A stretch of DNA of 39,946 nt, taken from positions 123,198,303 through 123,238,248 of the forward strand of contig NC_068983.1 of assembly GCF_001194135.2 (NCBI RefSeq). Direction: 5' to 3'. The notes below the pieces were generated by a model that had not been told where the DNA came from, did not search any database, and saw nothing but the letters and a program-made list of their open reading frames with translations. Below, one piece after another: positions 2,387-38,641 of this stretch (within the stretch, counting starts at the first letter, position 1; each line of letters begins with the position of its first letter). Source of the stretch: Octopus bimaculoides. Taxonomy: Eukaryota. The translations under genes were made by a program, and so were the position numbers.

Positions 2387-2728
2387 AGTGTATATGTCTA
2401 TACATATATTTATATATTTTTATATATAACGTTGACCACTAACGTGGACATTCAATGTGCTAGAAATAGATCACATCTTGTGTCTACTAAGACCTAAATT
2501 GTTCTCAAAACGGAATTTACCTTCCCTTTTTTCTTTTTTCTTACTCTTCCTTTCTCATCTCTCTTCTTCCCTAATTTTTTTTTTGTATTCTCATGAAATA
2601 AAAGATTTTCATCTAGGTTGTAAAAAAAATTTTGATATTTTTCTCTTACATTCTTTTTATTAATTTTCTTTATTTTTTCTTTATTTTTTTTTTCTCTAGT
2701 ATATTATAAGTTGAAGAGAACTTCCATC

Positions 2729-2923
2729 ATGTCTTCAAGTTGCTTTCTTCGACCACTTCCTCTCTCCATGTTTCTACTCATCTCATTCTCCCTTGTATAT
2801 TTGGTCTTTGATGCATATTCAGTCTACAAGATTCCATTTCGTCTTCTTCCACGGAAAACTGAGCATGACCGAAATCGTGACTATTCTCGGTGGCCAACCT
2901 ACAAGCACATGAACTTTAATAAT
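2729..2923 (+). CDS. Exon 1 (first coding): MSSSCFLRPLPLSMFLLISFSLVYLVFDAYS...HMNFNN, with hydrophobic segment
   Basis: ATG in ccatcATG context, 65 open codons, donor gtaagt at 2924 (phase 0 matches exon 2). Upstream pyrimidine tract with AG at 2698-2699 or 2709-2710. No conserved motif anchors it, so it is less certain than the core exons. Confidence 0.75.
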
Positions 2924-5900: not shown

Positions 5901-8467
5901 NNNNNNNNNNNNNNNNNNNNNNNNNNNNNNNNNNNNNNNNNNNNGCGCACCCACCCCCACTACTAACTTGGTCACCCAGATAGCGGAAGCTATCGACTAC
6001 CTCTAGTTTTTCTCCCTGGAATGAGATAGAAGTTGTTTCCTGTTTGTTTACAGTGTTTATTGCACCTGAACATCTGCCACATACAAAAACTAACTTCGTA
6101 GTTAATCTGCCTTTGATATTGCTGCACCTCTTATGTGTCCATAGCTTGCACCGGGTACATCTTATAGAGTTACTACCTACTCCTTTACTGCATACTGGAG
6201 TAGGTAGTAACTCTATATATATATATATATACATACACTCACATTCACTAATAAATGCACACACACACACATATAGTTTACATTTGTATGTTTCAGGAAT
6301 GGTTCAAGTTACACTGTTGGAACAATGAGAAAATTTCAATCTCTAATCTATATTCTGTCCTGAAGACACTAAAAATGTCTTCACTAAATGAGTGCAGGTA
6401 AGTTGATCTGTATATCTTCCTAGTGAACTTTTCTAAATGTTGACCTATCTGTCATTGCTTCTACTTGTGCTTCTTTATCTATTTCTTGCATCTTTTTTTT
6501 TTTTGTCTATTTGCCTATCTGTCTTTCTCTTCCTCTTTTTATCTCACTGTCTTTTTCAACGTATATTTAGCTATTTATCTGCATCTATCAGTGTATTCCC
6601 ACTGTCTGTATATTTGTGTATAGGATTAATGCATGTATGTACACATGCACATATATATACACATCAATCAGATGATTATATTTCACACCTGTGTAAAATT
6701 ACCATTTATTTACTATACATATATTTGTTCATTTTTACATATATATATGATGATGACACGCATGTATCTTAACATCCGTTTGCAGATGTATGGGGTTGGC
6801 TTACCTGTTCTAATAAATCTTCAGTAATCAAGATTCCTATGTACTGACCAAATTCACATAACATAGTTACACCAATATCTCTAAATAGATACAACATGCC
6901 TTGACTGTTATACTATACAAACAGCCGTATTGCATGATTCTCTTGTGTGTGGATTTTAGTGAATCTGCTTTGGTTTAATTACATTTCTATTTTTTAAATA
7001 CCTATTTCTCTCTCCATCAGAGAACTGTACGACAGAATCTCCAGTATATTCAGTGTAACTCAGAGGTCAGGTCAACTTGTGCTACCATCCCCATTTGTTG
7101 TGAAAGTGAGAAAATGGTTAGGTGGGAATCCATCATTATTTGCAGAAGCTAAATATCAGGTAAGTAAAATGTTTAAATGTCCAAGTGTATAGTGTGTATA
7201 TATATATATATATANNNNNNNNNNNNNNNNNNNNNNNNNNNNNNNNNNNNNNNNNNNNNNNNNNNNNNNNNNNNNNNNNNNNNNNNNNNNNNNNNNNNNN
7301 NNNNNNNNNNNNNNATAGTGTATATATACATATAGTATATATATATATATATATATAGTATGTTAAATATTCCAAGGAATTTCATTAACAAAGTATTGGT
7401 TTTGAAGTTTTCTTGCCAATATTTATCTCCATTAAGGCAGTGAGCTGACAGAATTGTTAGTGTGCTGAGCAAAATGCTTAGTAGTATTTTGTCTGTTTTT
7501 AAGTTCTGAGTTCAAATGCTGCCAAGGTTGACTTTACCTGTCATCGTTTTGGGGTTAGTAAAATAGATACCAGCTGAGTACTGGGCTCAATGAAATCAAC
7601 TTACCCCCTCACTTGAAATTACTGGCATTGTGCCAAAATTTAAAACCATTATTTATATCCATACACTGACATACATTTATATCAATATATGAGAAGGTGC
7701 TGAGAAGTTCATGGATTTGGGGAAAAGAAAATACAGGAGGATCTGGTTATTATGGTTTTAGTCAATATATTCCCCTCCCAGATTCACACACTTATTGCAG
7801 CAGTCCTTCAGGTGTTCTAAGCCCTGTAAAAGAACTCAGAAGGTTAGACTTTCAACCAGGCTTTTTGCAATACCCTTAAAGCCTGGAACTTTTTAACACC
7901 CGCGTACATGTGTGTGTGTGTTTCATAAGCTTCCTAATAGTTTCTATCTACCAAATTGCTCTTACATTGCTGTAGTAGAAGACACTTCCTTGCTGCACAT
8001 TAGGATCAAACCTGGAACCTTGTATTTGTGAATTGAACCAAGCAATCATGCCAGCATTCATTTACTCTCTGTTTAATACAATGATGCCTTCTGCTTGTCT
8101 TTTCTAGCACATCACTCTTGCCTTTAATGAATACACACGTGACAATACTATGTTTAATCCTCTTCGCTCAAAACGTCCTCTCCAGAAACCAAATCAACCA
8201 CAAAGAGAATAGTGAGTATCTATAGAGAATTGTTTTACTTGTCATCATCATCATTATTATGGTGGGGAGTTGGCTGAATCATTAGCATGTTGGACAAAAT
8301 GTTTAGCCACATTTCATCTGTCTATGTGTTCTGAGTTCAAATTCCACTGAGGACTTTACCTTTCACCCTTTCAGGGTTGTTAAAATAAGTACCAATTGAA
8401 CTCTGGGGTTAATGTAAACAATTTACCCTCTCCCCCTAAATTGCTGGCCTTGTGCCAAAATTTGTAA

Positions 8468-8501
<34 letters not shown>

Positions 8502-11500
8502 CATTATTATTATTATTATTACAGTGTAGAGCTAGCAGGATCATTAACATGCCGAGCAAAATGTTCAACAGCATTTTGTCTATACATTCTAAGTTCAAAT
8601 TCCACCAAGATTCAATTTTGCCTTTCATCCTTTTGAGATCAGACAAATAAGTACCAGTCAAGCACTGGGATCTATGTAAGTAACTAATCCCCTCTCCCAA
8701 AATTCCAGGCCTTGTGCCTGGCAGAATCATTAGCACACCAGGTAAAATGTTTAGCAGCATTTTGTTCATCTTTATGTTCAGAATTCAAGTGCCATTGGGG
8801 TGGACTTTGCCTTTCATCCCCTTTTGGGGTTGATAAAGTAAGTACCAGTTGAGTACTTGGGTTGATGTAATTGACTTACTCCTCCCCTGAAATTGTTGAC
8901 CTTGTGCCAAAATTTGAAACCATTATTACTATTATTATTATTTCCATTATTATTAAGGTTGTGAGCCGTGGAGGCGCAATGGCCCAGTGGTTAGGGCAGC
9001 GGACTCATGGCCATAGGATCACGGTTTCGATTCCCAGACCGGGCATTGTGAGTGTTTATTGAACGAAAACACCCAAAGCTCCACGAGGCTCCGGCAGGGG
9101 ATGGTGGTGAACCCTGCTGTACTCTTTCACCACAACTTTCTCTCACTCTTATTTCCTGTTTCTGTTGTGCCTGTAATTCAAAGGGTCAGCCTTGTCACAC
9201 TGTGTCATGCTGAATATCCCCGAGAACTACGTTAAGGGTACACATGTCTGTGGAGTGCTCAGCCACTTGCACGTTAATTTCACGAGCAGGCTGTTCCGTT
9301 GATCGGATCAACTGGAACCCTCGACGTCATAAGCGACGGAGTGCCAACAAAGGTTGTGAGCTAGTAGAATCATTAGTCATTATCATCATCACTTTTCCAT
9401 GTTTGCATGGATCAGATGGAATTTATTAAGGTAGATTTTCTATAGCCAGATACCCTTCCTATTGCCAACCCTCAACTGTTTCCAAACAAGGTAATATTTC
9501 CCCGTTGCCAGACATGTTTTCACAGAATATTGGAAATGAATGACAGTAAAAGTACCTTCCAGTATTTTCTTCTTGCATGCTACATTCTGAGTTCAAATCC
9601 TGACAAATAAACTTGGCTTTACATCCATTTGGCGGGGTTAGTCTAATTAACCCCTCCCATCAAAAATTGCTAGTTTTGTGCTTAAATTAGAAACTTTTAT
9701 TATTGTTATTTGTTTTGTTTTTGTTTTTTTGTTATTGTTATGATTAGGAAAATCATAAGAATATTGGATTTCTTCTGCCGCTTTACATTAAAATCCTGCT
9801 GTGGTCAACTTTAATTTTCATCTTTCTGGGGTTGATGAAATGAAGTACTAGTCAAATGCTGGAGTCCATATCAACTAAAGTCTCTTCCTAAAAAACTGTT
9901 GACCTTATATCTAAATCAGAAGCAATTATTATTATTAATGAGAGATGATACAATGTCATTAAGGATTTAATTACATTGAGTTTTAATTCTGTATGGAGTC
10001 TGGTTTGCCTTTTATTCAGCTGGGGGGAATTAAATCAATTACACTGCTCGCTCCATTGACATTTTGAGAGTTTGTTAAAGTGTCAGAAACAGTAAGACTA
10101 AATATGTCTTGCAATATTTTGTTAGGTCTCTTTATGTTTGATTTCAATTTACATTAAAAAAAAAAAATTATTATTTTTTATTTCTTTTGTTTTTTTTTTC
10201 CCCCCTGCAGTGTGGAAAAATTATCTGAGAAGACTGGTCAAAACTGTGACTTTTGTAAATATTCAAAGTAAGAAAATGTCTTCAAAATTATTTTCAGATA
10301 TTTTTGTTTTGTTTTTGTAGTTTTTTTGTTGTTTATTTGTTTTGTTGTTTTGTTATTTTTGTTCTTTTCATTTTTTTTTCTTTATATATGTCTGGTGTTG
10401 TGGAAATGGTTGTATCAGTAATGCATCAAACCAAATGCTTTATCTCTCAGCACCTTCAGTTTAAAATCTACCATGGATAATGAATTAAGGACTAGGAAAT
10501 ATTGAAGTACCAACATGGCTATAGCCTTTGGGCTGAAATGCATCAAAGAACAAAAGAATATATATATATGTGTTTGCATGTATGTAATGTATATATGTAT
10601 CTATGTATAAAATGCATATATGTATGTAATGTATATATGCATGTGATGTATGTATGAATGCATATATACATACACACATGCATACATATATACACACACT
10701 CACTCACCCACTCACTCACTCACTCACACATTCACTCACTCAGTGATACATTCTACAAAATGTGCCTTGTACCTTATCAAGAGAGATGTGAAAATTTTCA
10801 TTGCTGAGTAAGACATCTACCACATGGTTGTTCTTTAGTCTCATTTCAGCCCTGACTAAGCAGAACTATGATCAAAGATATTCCAACCTTGACCATTCCA
10901 TCTTTTTTTCGTATATCTGGGACTACATAGTCCAATATGCCCAGCCCATTTAAAAATTGTAGGGTATGATTTGAGGGTGATCTAGCATCTACTACTAGCA
11001 GGTTGCGTGAGTATGTAGTCTCTGTCATTGTCTCATATATATATATATATATACTAGCAGTATAGCCCGGCGCTGCTCGGGATTAAGTGCTTTATTTCAA
11101 ACCAAAATAAGTAACATCGACATCAGATTTGAGCGAAATCCGTTGAAATTGGTTTGGCTGAAAATGGTTTGCTGGCAATTTGATTGGGAAATCCCATAAG
11201 GAATCAGTTTATTGGTTATTTTCACTCATTGACTCTTTTTTTAAATGTTGCATTAGAGATCTGCATAGGAGAAGGTTGATCTGAAGGTTTGCATTGGGGA
11301 TCTGGATTGGAGTAACTTAGGAAAGCTTACCAACAACCTTAACCAAAAAATAAGGGGCCTGTCCCTTCTAGGTTAACTCTAACCCTAACCCCTAACNNNN
11401 NNNNNNNNNNNNNNNNNNNNNNNNNNNNNNNNNNNNNNNNNNNNNNNNNNNNNNNNNNNNNNNNNNNNNNNNNNNNNNNNNNNNNNNNNNNNNNNNNNNN

Positions 11501-17600: not shown

Positions 17601-19203
17601 TTATAAATATAAATTCTAAAGCTCAAATTTTATGGTTTATAAAACCATAATTTAAACCTATTTAAACTTGTCACATTTTTGCTCATCATCTTCAGACCTA
17701 CAATGAAATTAAGTACCATACCAAGAAGCACTACTTAGATCTGGTAGAGAAATCTCCTTGTTTACTTCTTTAACAGTCAAATCCAGTGTTATTTGTTTAA
17801 TCATTACTATTACTAACAGTAGAATCTGTCATCAAATCCTATCCACACAACCAGTTAAGTTCTTTGTAGTTTTGCAATTTACTGTCTTAACTGAATATAT
17901 CAACATTATCTAACACTATTAATATAATGAATGCAACAATGTTAATCATTTTTTACTTTACTTTCTCTTCTAGTTTTACTGCTGAAGATTTGTTTGGACG
18001 TATTGAATCAAAACACTCATTCACAGCTGCAAATGCCTTTAAATATGATGCATGGCATGCTTTAGTTATTACAAGGAAACATCATCCATTGAAATGGTCT
18101 GAAGATATATTTTTAGACTGTATGAAAGTAGCTAGAGAATGGTGAGTTTACTGTTTTCCTTGTAAATACATTCCTTCAAAGGTAAGTTAACCATCAACCA
18201 AAATTGTTATTTGTAGTTTGAATTTAAAATCCAGTGTAGCACACAACTTCATCAAATGCTTTAACACTTTGAAGTTTGATAAGAATCACTTAGTTTATAT
18301 GATGATGATGATGGACTCTCCTGTTGAAGACAGCATATGGGCATTCAGCTTTTGCGTAACAACCTGCACAAATGATCTGCTTATACTGATCAAATGTATG
18401 TACTGTACATTAGCTCACTTTCTCCATTAAATCAATGTTGTCTGAACAGGCACACAGTGTACCACATGTCAGGTGTCGAAGTGATTGCAGAGCAACATGA
18501 ATCGAAGTGTTTTTGCTCAACAACACAATGCACCACCCAGTCTAGGAATTGAAACCACAATCTTGCGATTATGAGTGCAACACCTTAATCACTTCGCCAT
18601 GCATCCTCAGAACATGATGATGATAATGATAATGGTCTCAAATTTTGCCACAAGGCCCACAATTTTAGGGGGAGGGATAAATCAATTACATTGATCCCAG
18701 TGTACAAATGGTACTTCTTTTATTGATCTTGATAGAATGAAAGGCAAAGTCAACCTCTGCAGGATTTGAACTTGAAACTTAAAGATGAACGAAATGCTGC
18801 TATGCATTTTACCCAGGATTCTGCCAGCTCTCTTACCTTAATAATAATGATTTCAAATTTTGGCACCGAACCAGCAGTTATTCTCATGTTATTTTGTGAT
18901 CACTTCGACACCTGACATGTGGTACACTGTGCACCTGCTCAGGCAACAGTGATTTGATGGAGGGAGTGAACTAATGAACAGCACATACATTTGATCATCA
19001 TAAACAAATCATTTGTGCAGGTTGTTTGGCAAAAGCCGAACACTTATACGTTGTCTTCGGTGGTAGAGTCCATCATATAAACATATAGTTTTTATTGAAG
19101 TGGATTGCACTGTGTTGACAAGCTTGCTCTTAAAATTCCTGTGTTTTAAATCAAAACTTGTTAGTTACTATAGTGACAACACTATCTATTTATCTTTCAC
19201 ATG

Positions 19204-19279: not shown

Positions 19280-22200
19280 CTATCTCTCTCTCTCAACAAC
19301 TTTTTCTTCTCACCTTCTAAAAATACATTGTGGCATATGTTTCGATACCTCCCCTTCTTTCCCTCCTTCTAATGCATATTATGACAGACAGACAGACAGT
19401 CAGATCCACTTCTATTTTATAATAGATTATAACTTAGGTATTATTAGGGAAAAGAGCACAATCTTTCTGTGTATTTCCACCTCATCTATTAAAGACTTTC
19501 ATGATATGGTCTTCTTGCAACTATCACTTCCAACTCTCCCTGCTTTTATGTATCCTATAACATATATATATATATATATATATATATCTGTCATTTCTTA
19601 CTTATATGTGAGTATGTATGTGTATGTGGCTGTGTGCATATAATGAGTATACAGATATATATGTGCTTGTTTGTATGTAAGATACATGTATATGTGAATG
19701 TACATATATATGCTTACATGTATGTATAAAATACATATGAGCTATGTTTATACACTTACTCTCACCATTGCCAATTTTCCATGGTGTTGCTCACAGTTTC
19801 CTTTTCTCTCCTTTTCCCCTAGCTGAGGCTACTCGGTGCCTAGGTAGGACCCCACCTCTTCTTTTTCCTTGTCTACCTCTTCATCACCCTCTCCCTTTCA
19901 CATATTTGTACCCAGTGATTTGTGGGATTAGGTTTTGTATGATTACAATGAACTAAAATCTCATTCTTCTTCTTGTATCTCAGGAGGACCTGCTAGGAAT
20001 CTTTCTACAGTCTCATCCTCATATTTCTGATTATATAATCAATAGCAACATAGCTATTTTTGAATGATTTTAACACTGTAAATAATGGAGCTTTGGTCTA
20101 TAAAGAATTGAAATATATTAGTTTTCTGCATTAATACAAAACCACAAATATTTTATATTAGGTCAATTGAATCAACTTCATGCATGTGTTGCATTTATTT
20201 TACTGAACCCAGTTATAAATTTAGAATGTAAGAAGACAAAACTAATTACTGTAAGATGTTTAACTTGACAAACTACTGTCTCTATCATACCTGAGTTAGC
20301 ACAGTTTTATGTAATCTGGGTAGCACAGTACAGCTAAGGATGTATTATGTGTTTTTAGGTTTAGAATATCACTCCCTAACAGGAGTTAACAATGGGGTGG
20401 ATGCTGGTGATGATGAGTTTCTAACTCATTGGGTACTACTGAAAATGTAATCTTCATATGGTGTATCTGTTGGATCCCATTTGCTTTTTAACTATACTTA
20501 CAGAAATAGTTAAACATAATACTACCAGCTAATAAAATAACTGTTAGTTTTACTGTTCTTGTTATTTAGAATGTTGAGTGCTTCCACACTATATTACCTA
20601 TTTGCTGTTAGTAGGACTGGTTTTAAACACAGTGCAATACTAATGACAGGATATAAGCCTTTCAGCTGCTGGCCCAACACCATATTAATTTTATGGTTCA
20701 AAACAGTTAAGCCAGTAGAAAATAGAAGTGAAGTTCTAACAGAAAACTGAAATTGCTACAGTTTTGTTCAAGGTGAAAATGCTGAAAAAACATTGTATCA
20801 GAAGATAAACTGTAGTACATTATTTCTCTCCCTTTTTTTCATGGATTTGTTCTTTTGCTTTCTCTCATGAGTTTTCTATATTATATATTGCTTATTTATC
20901 ACTGAACACTATCATTACAGGTATGAAAAAGTACATTCAGTAGATATCCGCTACAAATTACCAACGTTATTGTGGGATCTGCTGCCCCATGCCAGTGCCA
21001 GCCAAGTTCATCCACATATGCATATCAATCTACTTCCAGACAGATATTATGGTAAATATATTTAAATGAGAAATTATATGGTCATAAAGTCAACTGTATC
21101 TTCTTTATTTATGTTCATTTTTCATTCTGATATTTCAGCATAAGTACCCAACTGCATCTCCCTACCACAAATCACATATTCACCATTATACTGTCTACAC
21201 CAACAAAAGTTGATTATTTCATCAATGACAGAAACTCATAGACCCTGTAATCAACTTCATTTCCTTTTGCATTAGGTGGATAAACAATAATTCTTCTCAT
21301 CAGATTATTTATCTGTTGCTTGTTATATACCAAAACATCCCAGCAACTACTCACCAGGAAAGAGATAAACTGGGAGGATGTAGAATTAAATAAAATACCT
21401 ACAGCAGATTTTGATTACTGATTCATGAACTGATGGTCCATTACTTAGTCTGTTCAACCATTTCATTTACACAAAGCCACTTAGAATTGAAATTAAGATA
21501 TTTTAAACAATTGATGTGTAAATAGATAGGCAGAGGTCACTTTCTTAAGGAGTGGAGACACATGGCTTAGTGATTAGGGTATTGGTCTCATGATCATAAG
21601 ATCATGGTTTTGATTCCTGGACTGGGCGATGCATTGTGTTCTTGATCAAAACACTTCATTTCATGTTGCTCCAGTCTACTCAGCTAATAAAACAGAATAA
21701 TCCTGTGGTGGACTTGTGTCCCATCTAGGGAGGAATATATATACCAGAGAAACCAGGAAACTAGCCCTTTGCTGCTTATGAAGTAATGTGGACAAACCAC
21801 TTTGCTAAGAACTTAATAACAGAAAAAGCAGAGTAGACTTGTGATATAAACTTAGGGGGCTTTTTGAAAAAGCAAAAACTGCCAATATGATAACTGTGAG
21901 AACAGCATTTGACCACATTCTCTATACTAACCACAGATGCTGTGTTATTTGCAAAAAGGTTAAAATATAGGTCATATCAAACCTAGATATGTGCATAGTT
22001 TATAACTACTAACTACCCAGCTTAATATTATTTCAACATCACACTAGAACAAGGCATGGTATATTTGGAACAATGGAATTAGTCGTTTGAGAACTCTCTG
22101 CATGCCATAGATTTGCTAGCAACCAGAACCGTTCTTTACTGCAATATCATTTCAATGTCTCTCCTATCATTTCCTTACAGGGGTTATAGAAAACTGGCGT

Positions 22201-25200
22201 ATTGCAGCTGAACACTTCAGTAATGATTATCCAGAAAGAAACTATTTCTCAGAAGTACTCTACATCCATTCAATGTTAGACTTGGCTTTCCATTATAAAA
22301 CTGCCGCTGCATTTGCTAATATTGTGAGTATCTTTGCATTTCTCTTCTTTTTTATTCTTTTTTAATTTCTCCTTTTTGTGTGTTTTTCTTTTCTTGTTTT
22401 TAATATCAGTGCAATTCAGATCCGTTCAGTTGTCAATTATGTACTCAAAGAAATGCAGTCCATGTTGCTGAAACAACAAATTGTAGAAGTGAATTAATCT
22501 ATATCAAATGACAATCGAAGAGCTGGAACAAATACCACAAGACATTTTATCTCTACCAATTCTGTCAGTCCACTGTTATAATAATAATTTCTGACTTCAA
22601 AATAAGAATGAAGCATATAGTTGATTATGACTACTACTTATATGAACACCCTTGAGAGATGAAGACAAAGTCAATTTCATTGAGAGTTGAACTGACTATA
22701 GACAGATGATGCTAGATATTGTAAGATCCAGAAATGATGAACCAATGAGGAAGTCTTTATGTGGTCATTCAACCTGCTAGAAATATCAGTCAGATAACTT
22801 AAACCATAACTTAATATCTTAAGAAAGAAAAGTCAAACTATATAATATAGTTCTAGATACACTGTGTAGCAAAAAGTAATTATAGCTGCTACACCATTGG
22901 TCATAAGTTTGCTTGATCTTAACTGACCTTTGGTAAACAATTTCATCAGCAATATTTCAATAACATAATGTCATAACAGTAACAAAAATATTTTTACTCT
23001 GGAGTTGTTGATGATATTAAGAGTATTTACTGACTGAAAGAAGAAAACCTGCACAACAAAGACTAGCAGTTTTCTCTGTTGCTATGTGGACAAAAATATA
23101 TAAGTGACAAAATGCTGAAAAACCTGTCCAATCCATACCAGTATGGGGAAAAAATAGATGTGAAATGATGAGGATGTAATAACATGATATTGTTTCACAT
23201 AATATTTCTTCTTGAAATTTTGCAAAGTAAGCAATAACATCTCAACTACTGAAAGCTGTTTGTTCCTTATAGGGACCCAGGGAACCTACACAACCAACCT
23301 CTGCATAATAGTTTGTTACATTATAGTCAAAGCCCAGACTATAGCATTTCATGTCTGAGGAGCCAATTACATGAGATACTTTTCTTTGACAATCAAGTGT
23401 GTCAACATTTATTATTATTATTATTAGGTATTAGTGTTAGTCTATAATAATTTAATGATTATTTTTTTCCAGCTGATATTGACAAATTCAAATCACAACA
23501 GAATACACTCTAATATAGCTGTGACAATAACTGCTTCCATAGCACCAAGCTCTATGCTGAGTTAGAAAATCCCTGCACTGTGTTTGTATCTAACATTAAC
23601 TAAGTTTATCATTTGATATATTTTTTAATTCCATCATCACCATTTAACATTGACTTACATACTGGAATGGGTTAGATAGCTGGATAGTTTAACTGGATCC
23701 AATTAGTAATGGGACTGCATTGTGCTCCGGTGTCTTCTTTAGCGTAGTTTCTATGACTAGATGCCCTTCCTAATGTCAGCTGCTTTCTTTTTACATGGTC
23801 CTTACAATCAAAGGAAGATAAAAGAGAGATGGTACAATGATTTGGACTGGGTGATGAGAGAGAAATGGGATTTATAGATATGCAAATGTGGTAGTAGGGA
23901 GAGTAGCAAAACAGAAGCTATTAGAGGAAATAGTATGGAAGAGACAGGAGAAGGGATTTGTGTCAGAGATTAGTGAAAAAGTGGAGACAGAATGGAAAGA
24001 TGATTAAGTGGGTTGTGTCAAGGTTGTCCAGGAGCATCCTACATTAGAAGTTTGAGTATGAATGAATGGTACATGGGAAAGCTGAACAAGAAAGGTAGAA
24101 GTAGATGAGGGTGGCAAGAGATGCAAAGAATCATTGAAAGGGAAGTATGAGAGTTGTGGGTGTAGATGAGAGAAGCTTGTTGAGGTAGTTGAGAAGCTAT
24201 AAGATGACAATGAGGGAATAATGGGGTAGTCCAACCAATGCCAGCATGGAAAAACGGATGGGAAATGATGATGAAGATGTTGATGAGCGTACAGTGGGCG
24301 CAGTAAGAACAATCAAGAAAAAAATAGTGTGGCAGGCACCTTAAAGGTAAGGGAGAAGAAGAGAGTGTGAATCCAGAGAAAGTATCCTATGTGAGGAGGC
24401 TGTGGAAAGGGGACAGCAAAAGAAGTGGGTAGAGGGAGCACTAAAAAGTTATATATTTCCTGTTTTGATTGCAAAGCTAAAATATGATAATAGGTGCAAA
24501 ATGTCAATTGTCCTCCAACTATTCAATTAATTGTCCCTGTGCTGTACTAAGATTCGCTTGAGTGAACTCGTTACAATTACACTACAATATCAGCAGGTTA
24601 AGTAATCAAATATTTCAACCTCATTAATAAAAAAAAAAAATAAGTACTTAATTTTGAAAAATGGTTTATAATGCTCACAGAACATTATCTTTTAATAGAG
24701 AACTAAAAAAGTTGCTGTGAATATTAGGCCTCGTTATCTCTGAACACTCCTCCCCCCCCCCCCATCCACATATATATCAAAACTACATCACAAAGACTTT
24801 AAATCAGAGAAATACTTCAGCTATTAGTTACTAAGACTCTACGGAGCTCAAAGAAGTCCCACATTGGAATACTGCTAACATAACATAGATGCTGCTGCAC
24901 ATCAAGGAGTGAAACCTAAAGAAGGCCAGTCATCTGATTTAACATGTTTCACCCACCAATTTGCTACAACCAGGGGCTCACAGAAGTATGGTTTCTTTTT
25001 TTTTTGCGGGGGGGGGGGCTTCTTCTACAACTACTATAATGGTTTCTGCTGTTTGCATACTCCTATCATGCAGGTTGATCTGATCCACTCATCTGTCCTC
25101 CTCTTGTCACCCTTATTATGTAACATCTCCCAGAACCTTCATTGAATACATCATCATTCATTCCAATCCAGGACTACAACCCTCTAGAACTCCATCCTTG

Positions 25201-26167
25201 CCCACATTCTTCTATAGATGTTAAGGTTAAACATCAACTGAATCAGTCTCTGAAAGGCCTGCAATGGTCATAGGCACTACCTCTCTTCTAACTTATTAAA
25301 AGAAAGCAAAAACACAAGATCATATATATATATACTAAGAGTAGTTTATATTTTGTGACATAGAAACTTTTCTCAAGGGCGTTAGTGGCATAAATGAAAG
25401 GATATAGCTTTTATTCTGTATCATTTGTTAAATACAACTGAAAGAAATTCTGTTTAATGTCCTAGGTTATTTTATTTTGTTTTTCATTTGTCTTATTTAA
25501 ATTTTCATTTAGACGCCAAAGAAAGATAATGAAATTGTTGTTCTTGGTGAAGCCCCCAACGATGATTTTTTTAAACTGTTGTACTATGTACTAAGAGGTA
25601 AACAGCTTTATTTTATTAAATGTCTGTTTGAAATGAGCTATTAATAAGATTATTATTTTTTTGGACTATTCATCTCATTGTTAGAGATGAAACACTTTTC
25701 TGTATATATATCTACATTGTTTTTGTTGATTTGATCTCTTATTTCTATTTGGTGCCTTATTTTTGGCAGTCTACATAGTACCAGACTGCTTTATTTCATT
25801 TGTTCTTTTTTTTAACCCTAATTTATCAGTCAAATCGTCCAACCCATGCTAGGCATGGAAAGCAGACGTTAAACAATGATGATGATATATATATATATAT
25901 CTGTAAAAATATGTGACACTTATTCGGTAGCAATGATAAAACTCTGAGTTTTGGATGCCAGGGTGGGAGCCCACGCCAACATCTCTTCAGTTATCCAGCC
26001 ATTGAAAATTCCTGTGAAAAATGATGTTGGCGTGGGCTCCCACCCCGGCATCCGAAACTCAGAGTTTTATCATGGCTACCGAATAAGTATCACATATTTT
26101 TACAGATAAATTCCTTTATTTACATAATATCAAGGCCCCTTTCTTTCTTTTGTTGTCCTTCCTATCA

Positions 26168-30514: not shown

Positions 30515-32062
30515 TAGATAAAAAGAGATAACAAAGCCAGTTGTGAGGAGTTTTCAGGACATTTATAAGGAAATAGCTACATAAGAAAATAGATATAGAC
30601 ATTCTAATCATGCACATCCGTCTCCTCCCTCCTATCTATCCATAAATACTACCAATACATTCTCAAATTTTTATTCACACCACAAAACCCTTTCGAATGA
30701 GCAACACAGAATCCACAGCTCCATACTTTGAAATGACTAAATATGGGGAAGTGAAATCGAAATCGAAAATTGAACCAAATTCGTTGACTGGCACCCATGC
30801 CAACCTTCCTTCATTGGACACTAAACTCAGCTTGCGAAGACCTGTTGGGGCAAGTGAGATTGGGACTGAACCAAATTCGATGACTAGCACTTGTGCCAGT
30901 GGAGCGCTAACAGCACCATCCGAGCGGGATCACTGCCAGAGCAGCGGTCTCGCTTCCGTGCCGGTGGCACATAAAAAGCACCATTTGAGCTCGATCGTTT
31001 CCAGCTTTGCCTTACCGGCACTTGTGCTGGTAGCATGTGAACAAAACATTGGCTGACTCCTGTGCAGGTGGCACGTAAAAAACACCACTTGAGCATGGCC
31101 GTTGCCAGTACCACTTGACTAGCCTTCGTGCCGGTGGTACCTAAAAGCACCCACTACATTCGTGGAGTGGTTGGCGGTAGAAAGAGCATCCAGTTGTAGA
31201 CACTCTGCCAAATCAGATTGGAGTCTTGTGTAGCCATCTGGTTTACCAGTCCCCAGTCAAATCGTCCAACCCATGCTAGCATGGAAAGCGGATGTAACAT
31301 AGTGGTTCAGCAAAAGTAACTGATAGAATAAGTACTGGGCTTTTTTTTTTTCAAGTCATGGAGTCAATTTGTCCAACTAAAACCCTTCAAGGTGCTGCTC
31401 CAGCATGACCACAGTCAAAATGGCCTGAAGCAAGTAAAAGAATAAAAGAATATATATAGCAACAAAAAAATATCTCATATAACGTCACAATACCTTTTGA
31501 CACTAGTTCTCAACAGCTTCTTTCTGTGAGGCTATTATTAGCAATTCAATTTCTCATTTTGTGTTTTTAAATATATTGATATATATTTATATGTGTGTGT
31601 ATGTATATATATATATATATATATATACATACATACATACAAAGAAATCACAAAGGAGTGTTGGAAGGGTTTATAAAAACCATTGATAGCGACACTGTTG
31701 AAAACAACATACTCCACGCCCAATTGAATAGGTACAGAATTTTCAAACATTAATCTTATGTTGTTTACTTTCAGTTTGTCAGTAGAATACATATATATTA
31801 ATACATATATTACATATACAATGTATGCTGTATATAACACACTATATATAAGGTGGTCCAAAAATAGGTTTACAGTCATCATGTAGGCATTTTAAATTTC
31901 TTTTAAAACATTTTATTACATTTCAATTTCTATCTTATAATTAACTAAATTCGCATAGAATAATGGTTTCTTATTTTTTTTTATAATTAAGATCTAGACT
32001 GTTAATATATGAATGCGAAAGAGATATTTGAATAACTGTAAAGCTACTCTTGGGCCACCCTC

Positions 32063-32119: not shown

Positions 32120-35100
32120 GGTGGCCCAAGAGTAGCTTAACCTGTTGAAAGCCACTGACCAGATTTGTGGGTGGTGTAAGGTCCCCTCCCGACCCAGAGT
32201 AACGTGGTGGTGGAACAAGGAGGTAGACAGGGCTATTAGACAAAAGAAACAGGCTTGGAAGGACTGGAAGAATGGTGGTAGCAGGGAATTGTACCAATGT
32301 GCCAGAAGGGAGGCTAGGCGACAGGTTTATTTAGCCAGAGGGGAAGCAGATAAGAAAAGATTTACCANNNNNNNNNNNNNNNNNNNNNNNNNNNNNNNNN
32401 NNNNNNNNNNNNNNNNNNNNNNNNNNNNNNNNNNNNNNNNNNNNNNNNNNNNNNNNNNNNNNNNNNNNNNNNNNNNNNNNNNNNNNNNNNNNNNNNNNNN
32501 NNNNNNNNNNNNNNNNNNNNNNNNNNNNNNNNNNNNNNNNNNNNNNNNNNNNNNNNNNNNNNNNNNNNNNNNNNNNNNNNNNNNNNNNNNNNNNNNNNNN
32601 NNNNNNNNNNNNNNNNNNNNNNNNNNNNNNNNNNNNNNNNNNNNNNNNNNNNNNNNNNNNNNNNNNNNNNNNNNNNNNNNNNNNNNNNNNNNNNNNNNNN
32701 NNNNNNNNNNNNNNNNNNNNNNNNNNNNNNNNNNNNNNNNNNNNNNNNNNNNNNNNNNNNNNNNNNNNNNNNNNNNNNNNNNNNNNNNNNNNNNNNNNNN
32801 NNNNNNNNNNNNNNNNNNNNNNNNNNNNNNNNNNNNNNNNNNNNNNNNNNNNNNNNNNNNNNNNNNNNNNNNNNNNNNNNNNNNNNNNNNNNNNNNNNNN
32901 NNNNNNNNNNNNNNNNNNNNNNNNNNNNNNNNNNNNNNNNNNNNNNNNNNNNNNNNNNNNNNNNNNNNNNNNNNNNNNNNNNNNNNNNNNNNNNNNNNNN
33001 NNNNNNNNNNNNNNNNNNNNNNNNNNNNNNNNNNNNNNNNNNNNNNNNNNNNNNNNNNNNNNNNNNNNNNNNNNNNNNNNNNNNNNNNNNNNNNNNNNNN
33101 NNNNNNNNNNNNNNNNNNNNNNNNNNNNNNNNNNNNNNNNNNNNNNNNNNNNNNNNNNNNNNNNNNNNNNNNNNNNNNNNNNNNNNNNNNNNNNNNNNNN
33201 NNNNNNNNNNNNNNNNNNNNNNNNNNNNNNNNNNNNNNNNNNNNNNNNNNNNNNNNNNNNNNNNNNNNNNNNNNNNNNNNNNNNNNNNNNNNNNNNNNNN
33301 NNNNNNNNNNNNNNNNNNNNNNNNNNNNNNNNNNNNNNNNNNNNNNACGATCGTATCCGATTAACTAAAGACTTGTTTTGTTTATGCCTTTCCCTCCGTT
33401 TTTTTGTTCTATGTGTGCCATAAATATTGCCATCCGTTTAGAGAAAAATTTGTAGTTTAGAATCAGTAGTTCTTTGACTGCTATTTCTAAATTTTCAGTA
33501 TGTTGGAGAAGCAACTCAATGCTAATCCCTGTATATTTATGATGATAAATGGTTTTACCGATAAAGGTTTTTTCATACTGAACTACTTGGCAAAATTGTT
33601 AATTATTAATTCTATTATTAATTGACGATTCCCTGCCCTTATTCTTGTGTATATATATATATATTGTAGCTTTGTGTCTATGTTTGTCCCCCACTTCCAC
33701 TTAATAACCGGTGTTGGTGTGTTTACATTCACTAACTTAGTAGTTCAGTAAAAGAGGTCAATAAAAAATAGTACCATGCATAAAAAAGAAAGAATTGGTA
33801 TCAATTTGTTCAATTAAAATTCTTCAAAGCATAACCCATTGTGGTCGCAGTCTGATGACTGAAAAAGATAAAAGACCCACTAAATTTCTTAGTAAAACTT
33901 TAAGCTAAGGGAGATGTTATGACATAGCTATAAACGTCTGGTGTAAAATGGTATTACACAAATAAATAGTTGGTTGTGGTTATCTAAAAATGACCTATCG
34001 CAGAAATATATGTTGACACAGAACGCACTCCATACATAGGTACAATACTCAGTATTCAATGTTCAACTTCTGACTGTTAAACCAACACACATCGAACTAA
34101 CATGGTTAACCAACATGTTCGAAGTAACACCATCAACTACACCCTGACAGTTCACTCTTCTTATTTATTGTAATTGGTTAGTCCACCTTCAGTCACATGG
34201 GGGTGTTCAGGTTTCTCCCATAACAGGAGGTAACTTTTGTTCACCTATCTCAGTAATACTATGGTACTGAAACCTCTCACGGTCGCTTTAACTGCTAGAA
34301 ATGCTTTTAAATCCGATCCTAATGCTGGATATTCAAGAAGCAAATGAAGGGCAGGTTTTCAATCCCGGGATCATCCTGGTTCCAAGAAGGTATAATATGT
34401 CTGTCTAGAGCAAATGTAGACTGAGGTACAGAGACAGTTACACTTTTATTAATATAGATACACACATACATATGCATGTATACACACACATATACACATA
34501 TATGTTTATTTCACTTCCAAATCACACCTGGCATCTTTAAAAAACATGACACATTAGATAAGAAGATTATTACAACTGGAATGTTTCTACTTTTAGATAT
34601 GCTTCAAGTAACAAAATAGGTTCATTTCATACTCAGTATATTGTGATTAAGAATTTCCTTCCTACTTTCAAACCCTTCAACTGAGCATTGTATTTTCTCT
34701 TTCCAGCTTATATTGATGACATGGAAAAACTTTGTTTTAGTATGGCTATTGCATTTCCAAGTATTGTAAGTATCACATTTACCATTTAAACTGAATCTGT
34801 ATGTTTATTTTGGGAATCCATTTTGTTATTTTACAGATTTCCATATTATTCCAAGCATAACATTCATGGCCTATCTCAGCTCATTTGTCTTTTAAGGCAT
34901 AGGATCATTTTGCTTTTAAAAACAAAACTTGCCTCTTTTGAAGGTTTTGCCAGCTCAAGATGATTTTCTAATTTCTTACACTTTGGTTTATTATGGTTGT
35001 CTTCACTAATTGTATTTATGCAGAGTTGAATGCTTTTTGGTATCTTCAAAGCTTTTGCAGAGTGAGAATGTTATATGTATCAATGGTGGAAAAAATTCTT

Positions 35101-36325: not shown

Positions 36326-38227
36326 TCAGGCTTCTTTCAGTTTCCATCTACCAAATCCACTCACAAGGTTTTGGTCAGCCTGAGGCTAGAGTAGAAGACA
36401 CTTGCCCAAGCTGCCATGCAGTGGGACTAAACCCAAAACCATGTAGTTGGGAAGCAAGCTTCTTACTACACAGACACATTGCACCTAAAATATATTTTTA
36501 TGATTTTTATATCGGTGGTGAGAGCAATGAACATTGGAGGTTATCATGGTGGTGTTAAATCAATAGTCAAATTTATTGCAGCTGCTCATTAAAACTGGTT
36601 TTGTTGATTTTTGGTATTTTAATGTCTTGTCTGCAACTATATTTTAATTTATTCCCTTTTCATTTTTTCCTTTTTCTTTTTAGTTGAAGGAGGATGTCAC
36701 AGGTCGCTTACCTGTCTATGCACGGCTGATATCTCGAGGTACAGTTGGTGAAGTACGCTCTGATATCAGCTCCCTGGAGCTATTTGCGGTAAGCTAAAGA
36801 ATAGATTTCATCCTTCATTGTATTGTTTGTTTTCTTAATTTGTCTGAGCTTTTTGATGTTCTTTGCATTGAATATGGTAACACTAACTTATTTTAATTTT
36901 TAATTCTGATGACATTGATTAAATTAAAAGCTTTTATTTTAGTTTGTTGGGTTTATCCCTTCATGGCATTCTATATCTCATTATGTCAGTGCTGGCTGGT
37001 TTTCTTTGGTATTAATCATCATCGTCGTTTAACGTCCGTTTTCCATGCTAGCATGGGTTGGACGATTTGACTGAGGACTGGTGAAACCAGATGGCTACAC
37101 CAGGCTCCAATCTGATTTGGCAGAGTTTCTACAGCTGGATGCCCTTCCTAACGCCAACCACTCAGAGAGTGTAGTGGGTGCTTTTACATGTCACCCGCAC
37201 GAAGGCCAGTCAGGCGGTACTGGCAACGGCCATGCTCAAGATGGTGTATTTTATGTGCCACCTGCACAAGAGCCAGTCCAGAGGCACTGGCAAGTGTTTG
37301 AAAAACAAATCTGCTCCTGGTTTGGCTGCCAGTCTCTTACAGATGACATTTCTGCACTTAATACTGTATGCCAATGAATCAGTTATCACTTTTACAGTGA
37401 TGTTGCTCTATAATACTTAACTAATGATACCATCCCAGTGAGAGAACCTCTACATGGCTGCTTAGAATTAGCAGCTAATCTCCCTACAAAACACACTCTG
37501 TTGTCTTTATAATGGAAGGTTATTTTGCTGAGTTAGTAGTGCAAAATTTTCAAAATGTATCATATTCTGTTAGAAAGTAACCTAAAATGAAGATTAAATT
37601 ATATCATATCATCATCAACATTGTTGTCATCATTTAACGTCCATGTTTCATACTGGTTTGGGTTGGACTGTTTGACAGGATCCTATGAATTGAAGGACTG
37701 CGCTGTGACATGGTTTCTATGGTTGGATGCCCTTCCTGATGCCAACCACTTTACAGTATTTACTGAGTGCTTTATTCGTGCCACCAGCAGTAGTGGAGTT
37801 GCATTGCAATATGCAAAACTACAAACTCTGAGGGGGATGGTTTATGCTAGCAAATGAGGGATGCCCTGGTACAAAAATTAAGAAATTTGCAGAAAGGAAT
37901 TAGACATTTTCCTCTCCCCAATACTAGATGAACCAACAGTCCAACATGAGGTACAGACGAGGGCAGTGGAATCAAACTCAGTTATATATCAAATATACCA
38001 ACAGTTGGGAAAATGGCACATACAGGAGTAGTGATGTGAAACACCCAAACTGAGAAAGTTAGGAAGACCATGGAGGTGCTCCAGCATGACCACAGCTGCA
38101 TGGCTGAAATGAAAGAATATATATATATACAAATGATATATATATATTATATATATATAAATAATATATATATATATGTAAATAATATATATATTATATA
38201 ATGTATAATATATATATATATATATAT

Positions 38228-38265: not shown

Positions 38266-38571
38266 TCAAGGTGAATATGGTACTTAAGTTTAAGCACCAC
38301 AATTAATTATGGTATTATCCAAACAATTCCAAAATAAGGTGATTCAAATCAAAATAAGCAACAAGGATATTCAAGGTTAATGCAGTAATGTGTATTGAAG
38401 TAATTTGTTTTCGTATTTCACATTGTTTACTGTTGGAGACGTCCTGTACCCATATATGTATGTGTATATATATCATCATCATCATCATCATCGTTTAACA
38501 TCCGCTTTCCATGCTAGCATGGGTTGGACGATTTGACTGAGGACTGGTGAAACTGGATGGCAACACCAGGC

Positions 38572-38641
<70 letters not shown>

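What the first reader, a model, noticed from the sequence alone, without database searches (positions are those of the whole stretch)
20991..21029. Hybrid active site: GalT-type ASQVHPH ending in a hydrolase-type third His (HPHMH)
Seen: ...PHASASQVHPHMHIN. Established: HIT-superfamily transferases/phosphorylases (GalT, VTC2, Ap4A phosphorylase) use H-x-H-x-Q, whereas hydrolases (Hint, Fhit, aprataxin, DcpS) use H-x-H-x-H. Inference: a GalT scaffold rewired as a hydrolase, for example an NDP-sugar or dinucleoside-polyphosphate pyrophosphatase, with H287 as nucleophile and C192/C195/H227/H285 as a zinc site.
Basis: partly seen in the sequence, partly recalled or inferred. Interest (0 to 1): 0.75.

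Follow-up and report, generated by a model that had tools for sequence, protein, structure and literature searches.

The report
Octopus membrane-anchored GalT-like enzyme, HPHMH motif
The motif is real and lies in exon 7 of an intact 12-exon octopus gene for an uncharacterised, membrane-anchored enzyme with a GalT fold, but its unusual third histidine alternates with the usual glutamine across the family, so it does not by itself show a switch to hydrolysis.

Summary
Window 20991-21029 (+) encodes ASASQVHPHMHIN in exon 7 of a 12-exon gene (2729-39130).

The GalT scaffold is confirmed. An AlphaFold2 model of the O. sinensis orthologue (pLDDT 92) best matches Arabidopsis ADP-glucose phosphorylase and E. 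coli/human GalT. No Pfam or NCBIfam model reaches threshold, so this is an uncharacterised clade of the GalT branch. It occurs in bacteria, unicellular holozoans and non-vertebrate animals. Eukaryotic members add an N-terminal membrane anchor and a conserved cysteine pair, which points to a lumenal or extracellular enzyme.

H289 is not invariant. Of 202 members, 133 have Gln and 68 have His; the remaining sequence is gapped there. Gln is ancestral. His occurs in a cnidarian and most protostomes. The rest of the catalytic set is equally conserved in both forms, and a known HxHxH enzyme (M. tuberculosis Rv2613c) is a phosphorylase.

The hydrolase reading is therefore untested and weakened. Covariation also shows that the third zinc ligand is H235, not H227.

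The parts
2729..2923 (+). Exon 1 (ATG at 2729; residues 1-65). Contains the hydrophobic N-terminal anchor, residues 9-32 (2753-2824).
   Evidence: tblastn of homologue N-termini; splice and ORF check; best Kyte-Doolittle 19-aa window scores 2.06 at residue 9; AF2 helix 23-45 of P0160 corresponds to 10-32 here.
6297..6397 (+). Exon 2 (residues 66-99). Carries the conserved cysteines C72 (6315-6317) and C98 (6393-6395).
   Evidence: tblastn; AG/GT boundaries; C72 is conserved in 76/83 and C98 in 78/83 eukaryotic members.
7021..7159 (+). Exon 3 (residues 99-145).
   Evidence: tblastn with oyster P0001; AG/GT boundaries.
8108..8211 (+). Exon 4 (residues 146-180). Contains FNPLRSKRP (161-169), the GalT-type N-terminal nucleotide-binding motif with N162, R165 and R168.
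   Evidence: The motif aligns with At5g18200 FSPARAKRP and E. coli SPHRAKRP. R165 is conserved in 201/201 members.
10211..10267 (+). Exon 5 (residues 180-199). Contains CDFC: C192 (10245-10247) and C195 (10254-10256), two zinc ligands.
   Evidence: It aligns with the CxxC of At5g18200, E. coli GalT and the 1Y23 HIT protein.
17974..18141 (+). Exon 6 (residues 199-255). Contains N219, K222, H227 (18056-18058, the Hint-type HxLVI histidine) and H235 (18080-18082, inferred third zinc ligand).
   Evidence: H235 co-varies with C192/C195: His in 158/158 non-gapped members when C195 is present, and in only 4 of 41 when it is absent. An equivalent exon is present in the oyster genome at L001:11930-12094.
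20921..21051 (+). Exon 7 (residues 255-299), the exon holding the finding. Contains D274, H278, S282, H285 (first motif His, zinc ligand), H287 (nucleophile) and H289 (third motif residue).
   Evidence: conservation.
22181..22323 (+). Exon 8 (residues 299-346).
25513..25597 (+). Exon 9 (residues 347-375).
34707..34765 (+). Exon 10 (residues 375-394).
36684..36788 (+). Exon 11 (residues 395-429). Contains the conserved C-terminal block R408, R412, G413, D421 (RLISRG...RSDISSLELF).
   Evidence: R412 and D421 are at least 89% conserved in both the H and Q groups.
39047..39130 (+). Exon 12 (residues 430-456 plus the TAA stop).
   Evidence: it matches the C-terminus of the oyster and O. sinensis proteins.

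Best explanation
The exon belongs to an intact octopus gene for a 456-aa protein of an uncharacterised clade in the GalT branch of the HIT superfamily. The protein has a short N-terminus, one hydrophobic anchor (about residues 9-32), a stem with a conserved cysteine pair (C72, C98), and a two-lobed GalT-type catalytic domain (about residues 140-456). By inference, the catalytic domain faces the ER/Golgi lumen or the cell exterior. I infer that it cleaves a nucleotide-pyrophosphate substrate, most likely an NDP-sugar or a related purine-nucleotide conjugate. The inferred mechanism is the ordinary HIT one. H287 attacks the alpha-phosphate to form a covalent NMP-histidine intermediate, positioned by the zinc site C192/C195/H235/H285, with N162/R165/R168, N219 and S282 holding the nucleotide and phosphate. 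The NMP is then passed to an acceptor. The third motif residue, H289, takes the place of the Gln that hydrogen-bonds the phosphate in GalT and Apa2. In this family that position accepts only Gln or His, which are one codon-third-base change apart. Gln is ancestral; His is the derived state fixed in the one cnidarian identified and in most protostomes, including cephalopods. I read it as a lineage-specific and largely conservative replacement of a phosphate-binding hydrogen-bond donor, not as proof of a change of reaction class. Shown here: the gene model, the fold, the conservation pattern, the zinc-ligand covariation and the phylogenetic distribution. Inferred: topology, substrate class, covalent catalysis, and the functional near-equivalence of H and Q.
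For: Gene model: 12 exons with AG/GT boundaries and 98% colinear identity to O. sinensis LOC115209428. Fold: the AF2 model has pLDDT 92.3 and pTM 0.87; Foldseek top hits are 2H39/1Z84 ADP-glucose phosphorylase (E 1.6e-11, TM 0.70 on the target) followed by E. coli and human GalT. Profile against PDB: 1Y23 4e-6, 1Z84 5e-6, 1HXQ 1.7e-5, with the RxKRP, CxxC and HxH motifs aligned. Third residue: Q133/H68 among 202 members, the remaining sequence being gapped at this column; the Fitch root is Q with at least 14 changes on the NJ tree. Taxa with H are molluscs, annelids, arthropods, Priapulus, an acanthocephalan and a cnidarian. Taxa with Q are echinoderms, hemichordates, amphioxus, bryozoans, a choanoflagellate, Capsaspora, ichthyosporeans and bacteria. 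Fifty-two positions, including all inferred catalytic residues and the C-terminal R408/R412/G413/D421 block, are at least 85% conserved with the same residue in both H-type and Q-type holozoan members; only 7 Q-conserved positions are relaxed in the H type. Membrane anchor: 72/82 eukaryotic members have an N-terminal hydrophobic window, and C72/C98 are conserved. Bacterial neighbours are purine (purH, guaB, purA, purB) and NAD-salvage genes, or a trehalose/NDP-glucose operon. Literature: in GalT and Apa2 the third Gln hydrogen-bonds the alpha or beta phosphate (bioRxiv 10.64898/2026.09.13.751320); the M. tuberculosis HxHxH enzyme is a phosphorylase (PMC7705103).
Against: There are no biochemical data for any member. 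Each state is very stable within large clades: in the sample, every mollusc orthologue outside one gastropod paralogue pair has H, and nearly all ambulacrarians have Q, even though H and Q are one nucleotide apart. That stability suggests selection for the particular residue, and possibly a real functional difference. Some neighbouring positions co-vary with the switch: 288 is Ala in the Q type and a bulky hydrophobic residue in the H type, and K278 becomes His in about half of the H type, including octopus. Several apparent reversals involve divergent copies. The Asterias H copy has also lost R412 and D421, and the gastropod Q paralogues have a polar residue at 288. The count of 14 rests on an unbootstrapped NJ tree. 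The lumenal topology comes from sequence features only. I could not read the model coordinates, so no active-site geometry was measured.
Confidence: 0.55

Rival explanations
1. The Q-to-H change converts a GalT-type transferase or phosphorylase into a hydrolase, for example an NDP-sugar, NpnN or NAD pyrophosphatase. H287 is the nucleophile and H289 acts as it does in Hint/Fhit, so that water replaces phosphate or sugar-1-phosphate as acceptor.
For: The motif is a true HxHxH on a GalT fold. H is derived from an ancestral Q and has been retained across a cnidarian and most protostomes, which is consistent with selection for it. Positions 288 and 278 co-vary with it. The family keeps Hint-like features: the best PDB sequence hit is a Hint-type protein (1Y23), and the HxLVIxKxH spacing matches Hint. 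An ecto or lumenal location would suit a nucleotide-pyrophosphatase role.
Against: The acceptor-side and C-terminal conserved residues show no relaxation in the H type. The motif rule is not absolute, because Rv2613c has HxHxH and is a phosphorylase (PMC7705103). H and Q have exchanged many times, including back to Q. No assay exists.
Confidence: 0.2
2. The enzyme acts on a non-sugar nucleotide conjugate in the secretory pathway or outside the cell. Candidates are dinucleoside polyphosphates, ADP-ribose or NAD, or nucleotidylated (AMPylated/UMPylated) proteins or glycans. On this reading the H/Q state tunes the pH optimum or leaving-group protonation in an acidic compartment.
For: In 5 of 8 loci examined, bacterial members sit next to purine-nucleotide genes (purH, guaB), in two of them also next to NAD-salvage genes, and once next to a His_Phos_1+HIT fusion protein. 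Ap4A phosphorylase Apa2 is among the structural matches. The anchor and cysteine pair point to a lumenal or extracellular site.
Against: One bacterial member lies in an otsB / NTP_transferase / PGM / otsA operon, and another lies two genes from a GH15 gene, which favours NDP-sugars. The closest structures are NDP-hexose enzymes. Bacterial context at about 30% identity may not transfer to animals.
Confidence: 0.15
3. The protein is a catalytically dead pseudo-enzyme, a nucleotide-binding or scaffolding protein that only keeps the fold.
For: There is no direct evidence. The Asterias copy shows that members can lose conserved residues such as R412 and D421.
Against: The octopus protein keeps every residue that is near-invariant in the family: N162, R165, R168, C192, C195, N219, H235, S282, H285, H287, R412 and D421. 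It is 98% identical to the O. sinensis orthologue and 82% identical to that of Argonauta.
Confidence: 0.05

Closest known systems
Arabidopsis At5g18200 ADP-glucose phosphorylase (PDB 1Z84, 2H39), GalT branch of the HIT superfamily
   Same: It is the best structural match over the whole catalytic domain (Foldseek E 1.6e-11, TM 0.70 on the target, about 335 columns) and the second-best sequence-profile hit, 5e-6. It shares the N-terminal xNPxRxKRP motif, the CxxC, both the HxxVI histidine and the downstream zinc-ligand histidine, and the GAS..HxH block with its nucleophile.
   Different: Identity is only 12-14%. The plant enzyme has HSHSQ (third residue Gln), is soluble, and has no N-terminal anchor or cysteine-pair stem. 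The spacing between the two upstream histidines is 9 residues there and 8 here, which is the Hint spacing. No Pfam or NCBIfam GalT-type model reaches threshold on the octopus family.
Galactose-1-phosphate uridylyltransferase, class I (E. coli 1HXQ/1HXP/1GUP; human 5IN3, 6GQD)
   Same: It has the two-lobed HIT fold (TM 0.62-0.65 on the target). Its zinc site Cys52/Cys55/His115/His164 corresponds to C192/C195/H235/H285, its nucleophile His166 to H287, Ser161 to S282 and Asn153 to D274 (alignment; E. coli residue numbers from established literature).
   Different: GalT has Gln168 (human Gln188) where octopus has H289. GalT is cytosolic. Sequence similarity is detectable only with a family profile (E 1.7e-5).
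Hint/Fhit-type HIT hydrolases (e.g. B. subtilis HIT protein 1Y23, Hint1, Fhit)
   Same: They have a full HxHxH triad. The CxxC and HxLVIxKxH motifs have the same spacing. 1Y23 is the best PDB sequence hit of the family profile (E 4e-6).
   Different: They are single-domain proteins of about 110-150 aa that work as homodimers. The octopus protein is a fused two-lobe GalT-type chain with the GalT-specific N-terminal RxKRP segment. Pfam HIT scores 13.7-15.7 bits against a cut-off of 21.5.
Mycobacterium tuberculosis Rv2613c Ap4A phosphorylase (PDB 3ANO)
   Same: It is the mirror case showing that the third motif residue does not fix the reaction class: a proper HxHxH motif in an enzyme that phosphorolyses and does not hydrolyse (PMC7705103). 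It appears among the weak structural matches.
   Different: It is a small Fhit-like single-domain protein, not built on a GalT scaffold.
Bacterial GalT-like families of unknown function DUF4921 (PF16268) and DUF4931 (PF16285; PDB 4QVU)
   Same: They give weak sub-threshold Pfam hits for bacterial members of the family, and 4QVU is a structural match (E 5.8e-6).
   Different: All scores are below the gathering thresholds, so the octopus family is a separate clade.

Membership tests
HIT superfamily, GalT branch (GalT / ADP-glucose phosphorylase type) | One chain carries two HIT-like alpha/beta lobes (the GalT fold). | tested here: met
   The AF2 model of the 98%-identical O. sinensis orthologue (pLDDT 92.3) matches 2H39/1Z84 and E. 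coli and human GalT over about 335-355 columns, with TM 0.62-0.70 on the target.
HIT superfamily, GalT branch (GalT / ADP-glucose phosphorylase type) | N-terminal nucleotide-binding segment xNPLxxxRxxRP. | tested here: met
   FNPLRSKRP at 161-169 aligns with At5g18200 FSPARAKRP and E. coli SPHRAKRP. N162, R165, R168 and P169 are at least 93% conserved.
HIT superfamily, GalT branch (GalT / ADP-glucose phosphorylase type) | Structural zinc site made of Cys-x-x-Cys, an upstream His and the first motif His. | tested here: met
   C192/C195 align with the CxxC of 1Z84 and 1HXQ. H235 is His in 158/158 non-gapped members that have C195 and in only 4/41 that lack it, whereas H227 is independent of C195.
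HIT superfamily, GalT branch (GalT / ADP-glucose phosphorylase type) | The second motif His acts as nucleophile. | tested here: met
   H287 aligns with E. coli H166 and At5g18200 H186 and is conserved in 201/202 members. Covalent catalysis itself cannot be tested here.
HIT superfamily, GalT branch (GalT / ADP-glucose phosphorylase type) | The third motif residue is Gln (HxHxQ). | tested here: not met
   The octopus protein has H289 (CAT, 21021-21023). The family as a whole has Q in 133 and H in 68 of 202 members.
HIT superfamily, GalT branch (GalT / ADP-glucose phosphorylase type) | Recognised above threshold by a curated family model (Pfam GalP_UDP_transf, Ap4A_phos_N, DUF4921, DUF4931; NCBIfam galT). 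| tested here: not met
   Only sub-threshold hits were found for the octopus protein and 10 family members.
HIT superfamily, GalT branch (GalT / ADP-glucose phosphorylase type) | Ping-pong nucleotidyl transfer to phosphate or a sugar-1-phosphate acceptor. | not testable with these tools
   This needs an enzyme assay.
Hint/Fhit-type HIT hydrolases | [quoted passage not shown] | tested here: inconclusive
   HPHMHIN has all three histidines, but the last phi position is Asn. Other H-type members have hydrophobic residues there.
Hint/Fhit-type HIT hydrolases | A single HIT domain of about 110-150 aa that forms a homodimer. | tested here: not met
   The catalytic domain is a two-lobe chain of about 320 aa that matches GalT-type structures. 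Hint and Fhit match only about 105-120 columns, with E values of 4e-3 or weaker.
Hint/Fhit-type HIT hydrolases | Pfam HIT (PF01230) above the gathering score. | tested here: not met
   The scores are 15.7 and 13.7 bits against a cut-off of 21.5.

The most novel reading that the evidence does not exclude
Non-vertebrate animals carry a previously unstudied, membrane-anchored, lumenal or ecto-facing enzyme with a GalT fold. In it the Gln/His toggle at the third triad position is a genuine acceptor switch. Q-type orthologues (deuterostome invertebrates, unicellular holozoans, bacteria) would phosphorolyse or transfer. H-type orthologues (cnidarians and most protostomes, including octopus) would hydrolyse NDP-sugars or dinucleoside polyphosphates. 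That would be a natural, repeated experiment showing that one residue sets hydrolase versus transferase chemistry in the HIT superfamily.
Probability: 0.15. Interest if true: 0.7.

Novelty: new variant of a known kind. Interest (0 to 1): 0.45.

Why it matters
The HIT superfamily is a standard example of one fold and one covalent-histidine mechanism being partitioned between hydrolases (HxHxH) and transferases or phosphorylases (HxHxQ). This family sits on the transferase scaffold but carries both motif types in orthologous proteins. It therefore offers matched natural pairs, for example octopus or oyster against sea urchin or amphioxus, for testing what the third residue actually controls. No Pfam or NCBIfam model covers the family and I found no literature on it. 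It is conserved from bacteria to animals, was not detected in vertebrates in this search, and in eukaryotes appears to face the secretory lumen or the cell exterior, where no GalT-type enzyme is known to me. The substrate and biological role are open. If the residue proves functionally neutral, the finding reduces to the annotation of a new GalT-like subfamily.

Tried and rejected
(1) The 44-aa exon peptide alone gave nothing in Pfam or in the k-mer homologue search.

(2) My first guess for the CxxC exon (CWNC at about 17032-17124, weak GTTTTT donor) was wrong. tblastn with the oyster homologue placed the real CDFC exon at 10211-10267.

An attempt to submit the exon translations aligned to the oyster protein failed because MAFFT misaligned the fragments. 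I used the oyster protein P0001 alone instead.

(4) tblastx of the 5' region against the oyster locus found no conserved upstream exons. Exons 1 and 2 were found with full-length homologues instead.

(5) phmmer of the single protein against PDB and NCBIfam found nothing. Only the family profile reached GalT and HIT structures.

(6) I considered the sea stars Asterias (H) and Patiria (Q), 73% identical, as a clean example of a neutral swap. I rejected this because the Asterias copy has also lost R412 and D421.

(7) H227 as a zinc ligand is rejected in favour of H235 by covariation.

(8) An idea from memory only: the never-cloned yolk-platelet GTP:GTP guanylyltransferase (Gp4G synthetase) of Artemia, which forms an enzyme-GMP intermediate. 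I did not pursue it. No branchiopod appeared among the 112 named hits, and I cannot test it here.

(9) Rfam and tRNA scans of the window found nothing.

(10) Two literature searches aimed at finding a GalT-type or HIT-family enzyme with HxHxH, or one located in the Golgi, found nothing relevant.
Full report
**Observation**

The window is eukaryotic DNA: it has introns, eight runs of N, and many (TA)n and (CT)n tracts. The finding's coordinates, 20991-21029 (+), translate in frame to ASASQVHPHMHIN. They lie in a 131-nt exon (20921-21051) bounded by AG and GT.

The exon peptide alone found nothing in Pfam or in the k-mer homologue search. A 179-aa hand-spliced fragment found one relative, a partial oyster protein (Pinctada imbricata, P0001). 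tblastn of that protein against the window located eight of the other exons. It also showed that my first guess for the CxxC exon (CWNC near 17100) was wrong; the real one is CDFC at 10211-10267. Exons 1 and 2 came from full-length homologues, and the last exon from an ORF scan matched to the oyster C-terminus.

The final model has 12 exons on the + strand, all with canonical splice sites: 2729-2923, 6297-6397, 7021-7159, 8108-8211, 10211-10267, 17974-18141, 20921-21051, 22181-22323, 25513-25597, 34707-34765, 36684-36788 and 39047-39130. It encodes 456 aa. The protein is colinear without gaps with Octopus sinensis LOC115209428 isoform X3 (448/456 identical) and 82% identical to the Argonauta hians orthologue. 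The window therefore comes from an Octopus species, and the gene is intact.

**What family it is**

Pfam gives only a sub-threshold HIT hit, and NCBIfam gives nothing. This holds for the octopus protein and for ten relatives. An exhaustive phmmer search of 1.84 billion representative proteins with the oyster protein found 627 relatives at E<=1e-3.

A profile of 105 full-length members (alignment A2) hits solved structures:
- a Hint-type HIT protein, 1Y23, at 4e-6;
- Arabidopsis At5g18200 ADP-glucose phosphorylase, 1Z84, at 5e-6;
- E. coli GalT, 1HXQ, at 1.7e-5.

In these alignments FNPLRSKRP lines up with the GalT-type RAKRP segment, CDFC with the zinc CxxC, and GASQxHxH with the catalytic block.

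An AlphaFold2 model was made for the O. sinensis orthologue, because the tool does not accept spliced window sequences. It is confident: pLDDT 92.3, pTM 0.87. Its best PDB matches are 2H39/1Z84 (E 1.6e-11, TM 0.70 on the target, about 335 columns), then E. coli and human GalT, then Apa2 and DUF4931. Single-domain Hint and Fhit match only one lobe.

The protein belongs to a separate, uncharacterised clade of that branch.

**Distribution and topology**

A profile search that returns source names, plus one cluster look-up, found the family in the following groups:
- Molluscs: cephalopods, gastropods, bivalves.
- Annelids: Owenia, Capitella.
- Bryozoans.
- Arthropods: odonates, Strigamia, Orchesella, Armadillidium, Nymphon.
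- Priapulus, and the acanthocephalan Pomphorhynchus.
- The cnidarian Exaiptasia.
- Echinoderms, hemichordates and amphioxus.
- The choanoflagellate Salpingoeca punica, Capsaspora, and ichthyosporeans.
- Bacterial MAGs (Chloroflexi, Planctomycetia).

No vertebrate, tunicate, fly or nematode protein was among the 112 hits. All entries are labelled uncharacterised or carry automatic names.

Eukaryotic members are about 100 residues longer than bacterial ones. Seventy-two of 82 have a strongly hydrophobic 19-residue window near the N-terminus; in octopus it is PLPLSMFLLISFSLVYLVF at residues 9-27, and the model predicts a helix there. C72 and C98 are conserved in 76 and 78 of 83 eukaryotic members. 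I infer a signal-anchored, type II-like protein whose catalytic domain faces the lumen or the exterior. This is not shown.

**The third histidine**

In an alignment of 202 full-length members, the column of H289 holds Gln in 133 and His in 68. No other residue occurs there; the remaining sequence is gapped. S282, H285 and H287 are essentially invariant.

By taxon:
- Bacteria and unicellular holozoans, including the choanoflagellate, have Q.
- Echinoderms (except one Asterias copy), hemichordates and amphioxus have Q.
- Bryozoans, the sea spider Nymphon and a gastropod paralogue pair have Q.
- Cephalopods, the main gastropod and bivalve lines, annelids, most arthropods, Priapulus, the acanthocephalan and the sea anemone have H.

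On a neighbour-joining tree built without that column, Fitch parsimony gives Q at the root and at least 14 changes. The tree is not bootstrapped, so the number is rough. Taxonomy alone still requires several independent changes.

H289 is encoded by CAT. Gln codons are one third-position transversion away, so the restriction to {Q, H} reflects selection and not mutational distance.

Within the holozoan clade, 52 positions are at least 85% conserved with the same residue in both the H type (58 sequences) and the Q type (24). They include N162, R165, R168, C192, C195, N219, H227, H235, D274, S282, Q283, H285, H287, R408, R412, G413, D421 and D436. Only seven Q-conserved positions are relaxed in the H type, the most notable being K278, which is His in octopus. 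There is thus no sign that acceptor-binding residues became dispensable in the H type.

Against a purely neutral view, each state is very stable inside large clades, and positions 288 and 278 co-vary with it. One apparent recent swap, Asterias against Patiria at 73% identity, involves a copy that has also lost R412 and D421.

**Literature**

GalT-family proteins are described as having HXHXQ. The Gln hydrogen-bonds the alpha-phosphate in E. coli GalT or the beta-phosphate in Apa2, and zinc is bound by the first motif histidine (bioRxiv 10.64898/2026.09.13.751320). I found no paper on this family or on a GalT-scaffold HxHxH enzyme.

**Zinc site**

The profile alignments place the known third ligand (E. 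coli H115, At5g18200 H133) at octopus 235/236, with a one-residue register ambiguity, and not at 227. H227 corresponds to the HxLVI histidine of Hint-type proteins and to H124 of At5g18200.

Covariation settles the question. In the 161 members that keep C195, position 235 is His in all 158 that are not gapped there. In the 41 members that lack C195, of which all but one also lack C192, position 235 is His in only four and is otherwise Pro, Tyr, Ser or Ala. H227 and position 236 show no such dependence. The zinc set is therefore C192, C195, H235 and H285.

**Bacterial gene neighbourhoods**

The results are:
- In five of eight loci the gene directly follows purine-nucleotide genes. It follows purH in three loci; in two of those it is followed by the nicotinamidase and phosphoribosyltransferase genes of NAD salvage. 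It follows guaB in two loci, once with a His_Phos_1+HIT fusion gene in between.
- In one locus it heads an operon with otsB, a sugar-1-phosphate nucleotidylyltransferase, a phosphoglucomutase and otsA.
- In one locus it lies two genes upstream of a GH15 gene.
- In one locus the context is uninformative.

This fits an enzyme acting on purine-nucleotide conjugates or NDP-glucose, but it does not fix a substrate. At about 30% identity the transfer to animals is weak.

**Conclusion**

Two inferences do not hold as stated:
- That a third His makes the enzyme a hydrolase is untested. It is weakened by the Q/H alternation, by the unchanged conservation of the remaining catalytic residues, and by the Rv2613c precedent.
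- That H227 is a zinc ligand is contradicted by covariation.

The most likely picture is an active, zinc-stabilised, covalent-histidine nucleotidyl-transferring enzyme of the GalT branch, anchored in the secretory pathway, in which His is a lineage-specific substitute for the phosphate-binding Gln. A real change of acceptor in the H-type lineages is not excluded, and I put it at roughly 15-20%. Reciprocal H289Q and Q-to-H swaps in matched orthologues would test it directly.

Noticed in passing
window 4432-4618, 5064-5355, 26846-27129 (-), 31050-31295 (-), 37015-37293, 38452-38577: An interspersed repeat of about 130-290 bp is present in at least six copies at 88-96% identity, all inside introns of the gene. 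It looks SINE-like, and its translations repeat the string ...RLTSAFHASMGWTI. Neither the Rfam scan nor ARAGORN found any RNA or tRNA gene in the window, so no tRNA-like head was detected in these copies.
   Followed up: partly
window 4597-4946 (+) and 27933-28289 (-): Two stop-free stretches have the typical C-terminal tail of a LINE reverse-transcriptase ORF (...ERRLRWYGHVARM...GRGRPRKTWDEVV...). They look like retrotransposon fragments in introns 1 and 9. I recognised them by eye from the translations and did not scan them against Pfam.
   Followed up: no
window 8968-9348 (+) and 16566-16946 (-); 28445-28664 and 28723-28942: There is a 381-bp inverted repeat pair at 93% identity in introns 4 and 5. 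There is also a 220-bp exact direct duplication flanking the 58-N gap at 28665-28722; the duplication may be an assembly artefact.
   Followed up: no
L001:11930-12094 (Pinctada imbricata VSWD01000005.1): The deposited oyster protein FSP39_020641 (P0001) lacks the exon equivalent to octopus exon 6, which carries H227 and H235. The oyster genome does encode it (TAEDTFGRVETEMSFTAANTFKLDSWHTLILTKKHHPLNW...). The public model is therefore mis-spliced as well as 5'-partial.
   Followed up: yes
P0002 (565 aa, representative-library hit): This homologue contains the segment FTAEHETHRLE...HPHVHGFLTPHMYHGVVE twice in tandem, so the catalytic block is duplicated. It could be a gene-model or assembly artefact or a real tandem exon duplication. 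I excluded it from the alignments.
   Followed up: no
L002, L004, L009 (purH-[gene]); P0244 locus and L008 (guaB-[gene]): In bacterial MAGs the homologue is repeatedly placed immediately after purine-biosynthesis genes. In two Chloroflexi contigs it lies between purH and a nicotinamidase plus phosphoribosyltransferase pair (NAD salvage). In L008 a His_Phos_1+HIT fusion gene sits directly upstream.
   Followed up: partly
L005:8001-14128: One bacterial homologue (P0178) heads an apparent operon with trehalose-6-phosphate phosphatase, a sugar-1-phosphate nucleotidylyltransferase, a phosphoglucomutase and trehalose-6-phosphate synthase. This suggests an NDP-glucose link in that lineage.
   Followed up: no
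family alignment, octopus positions 192, 195 and 235: About a fifth of the members (41/202, apart from two aberrant models all about 350-410 aa, i.e. bacterial-size, including the named Dehalococcoidia MAG) have lost the whole zinc triad (both Cys and H235) but keep H285, H287 and Q289. They would be a zinc-free subgroup; the preprint read notes that metal binding has not been confirmed in yeast Apa2.
   Followed up: partly
window 2699-2728, upstream of the ATG at 2729: O. sinensis isoform X3 has 13 extra N-terminal residues (MRRLYYNLKRLRI). The corresponding in-frame stretch in the window (..VYYKLKRTSI) is open but has no ATG, so the window's protein starts at M1 = 2729, as does the 456-aa Argonauta protein.
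   Followed up: partly
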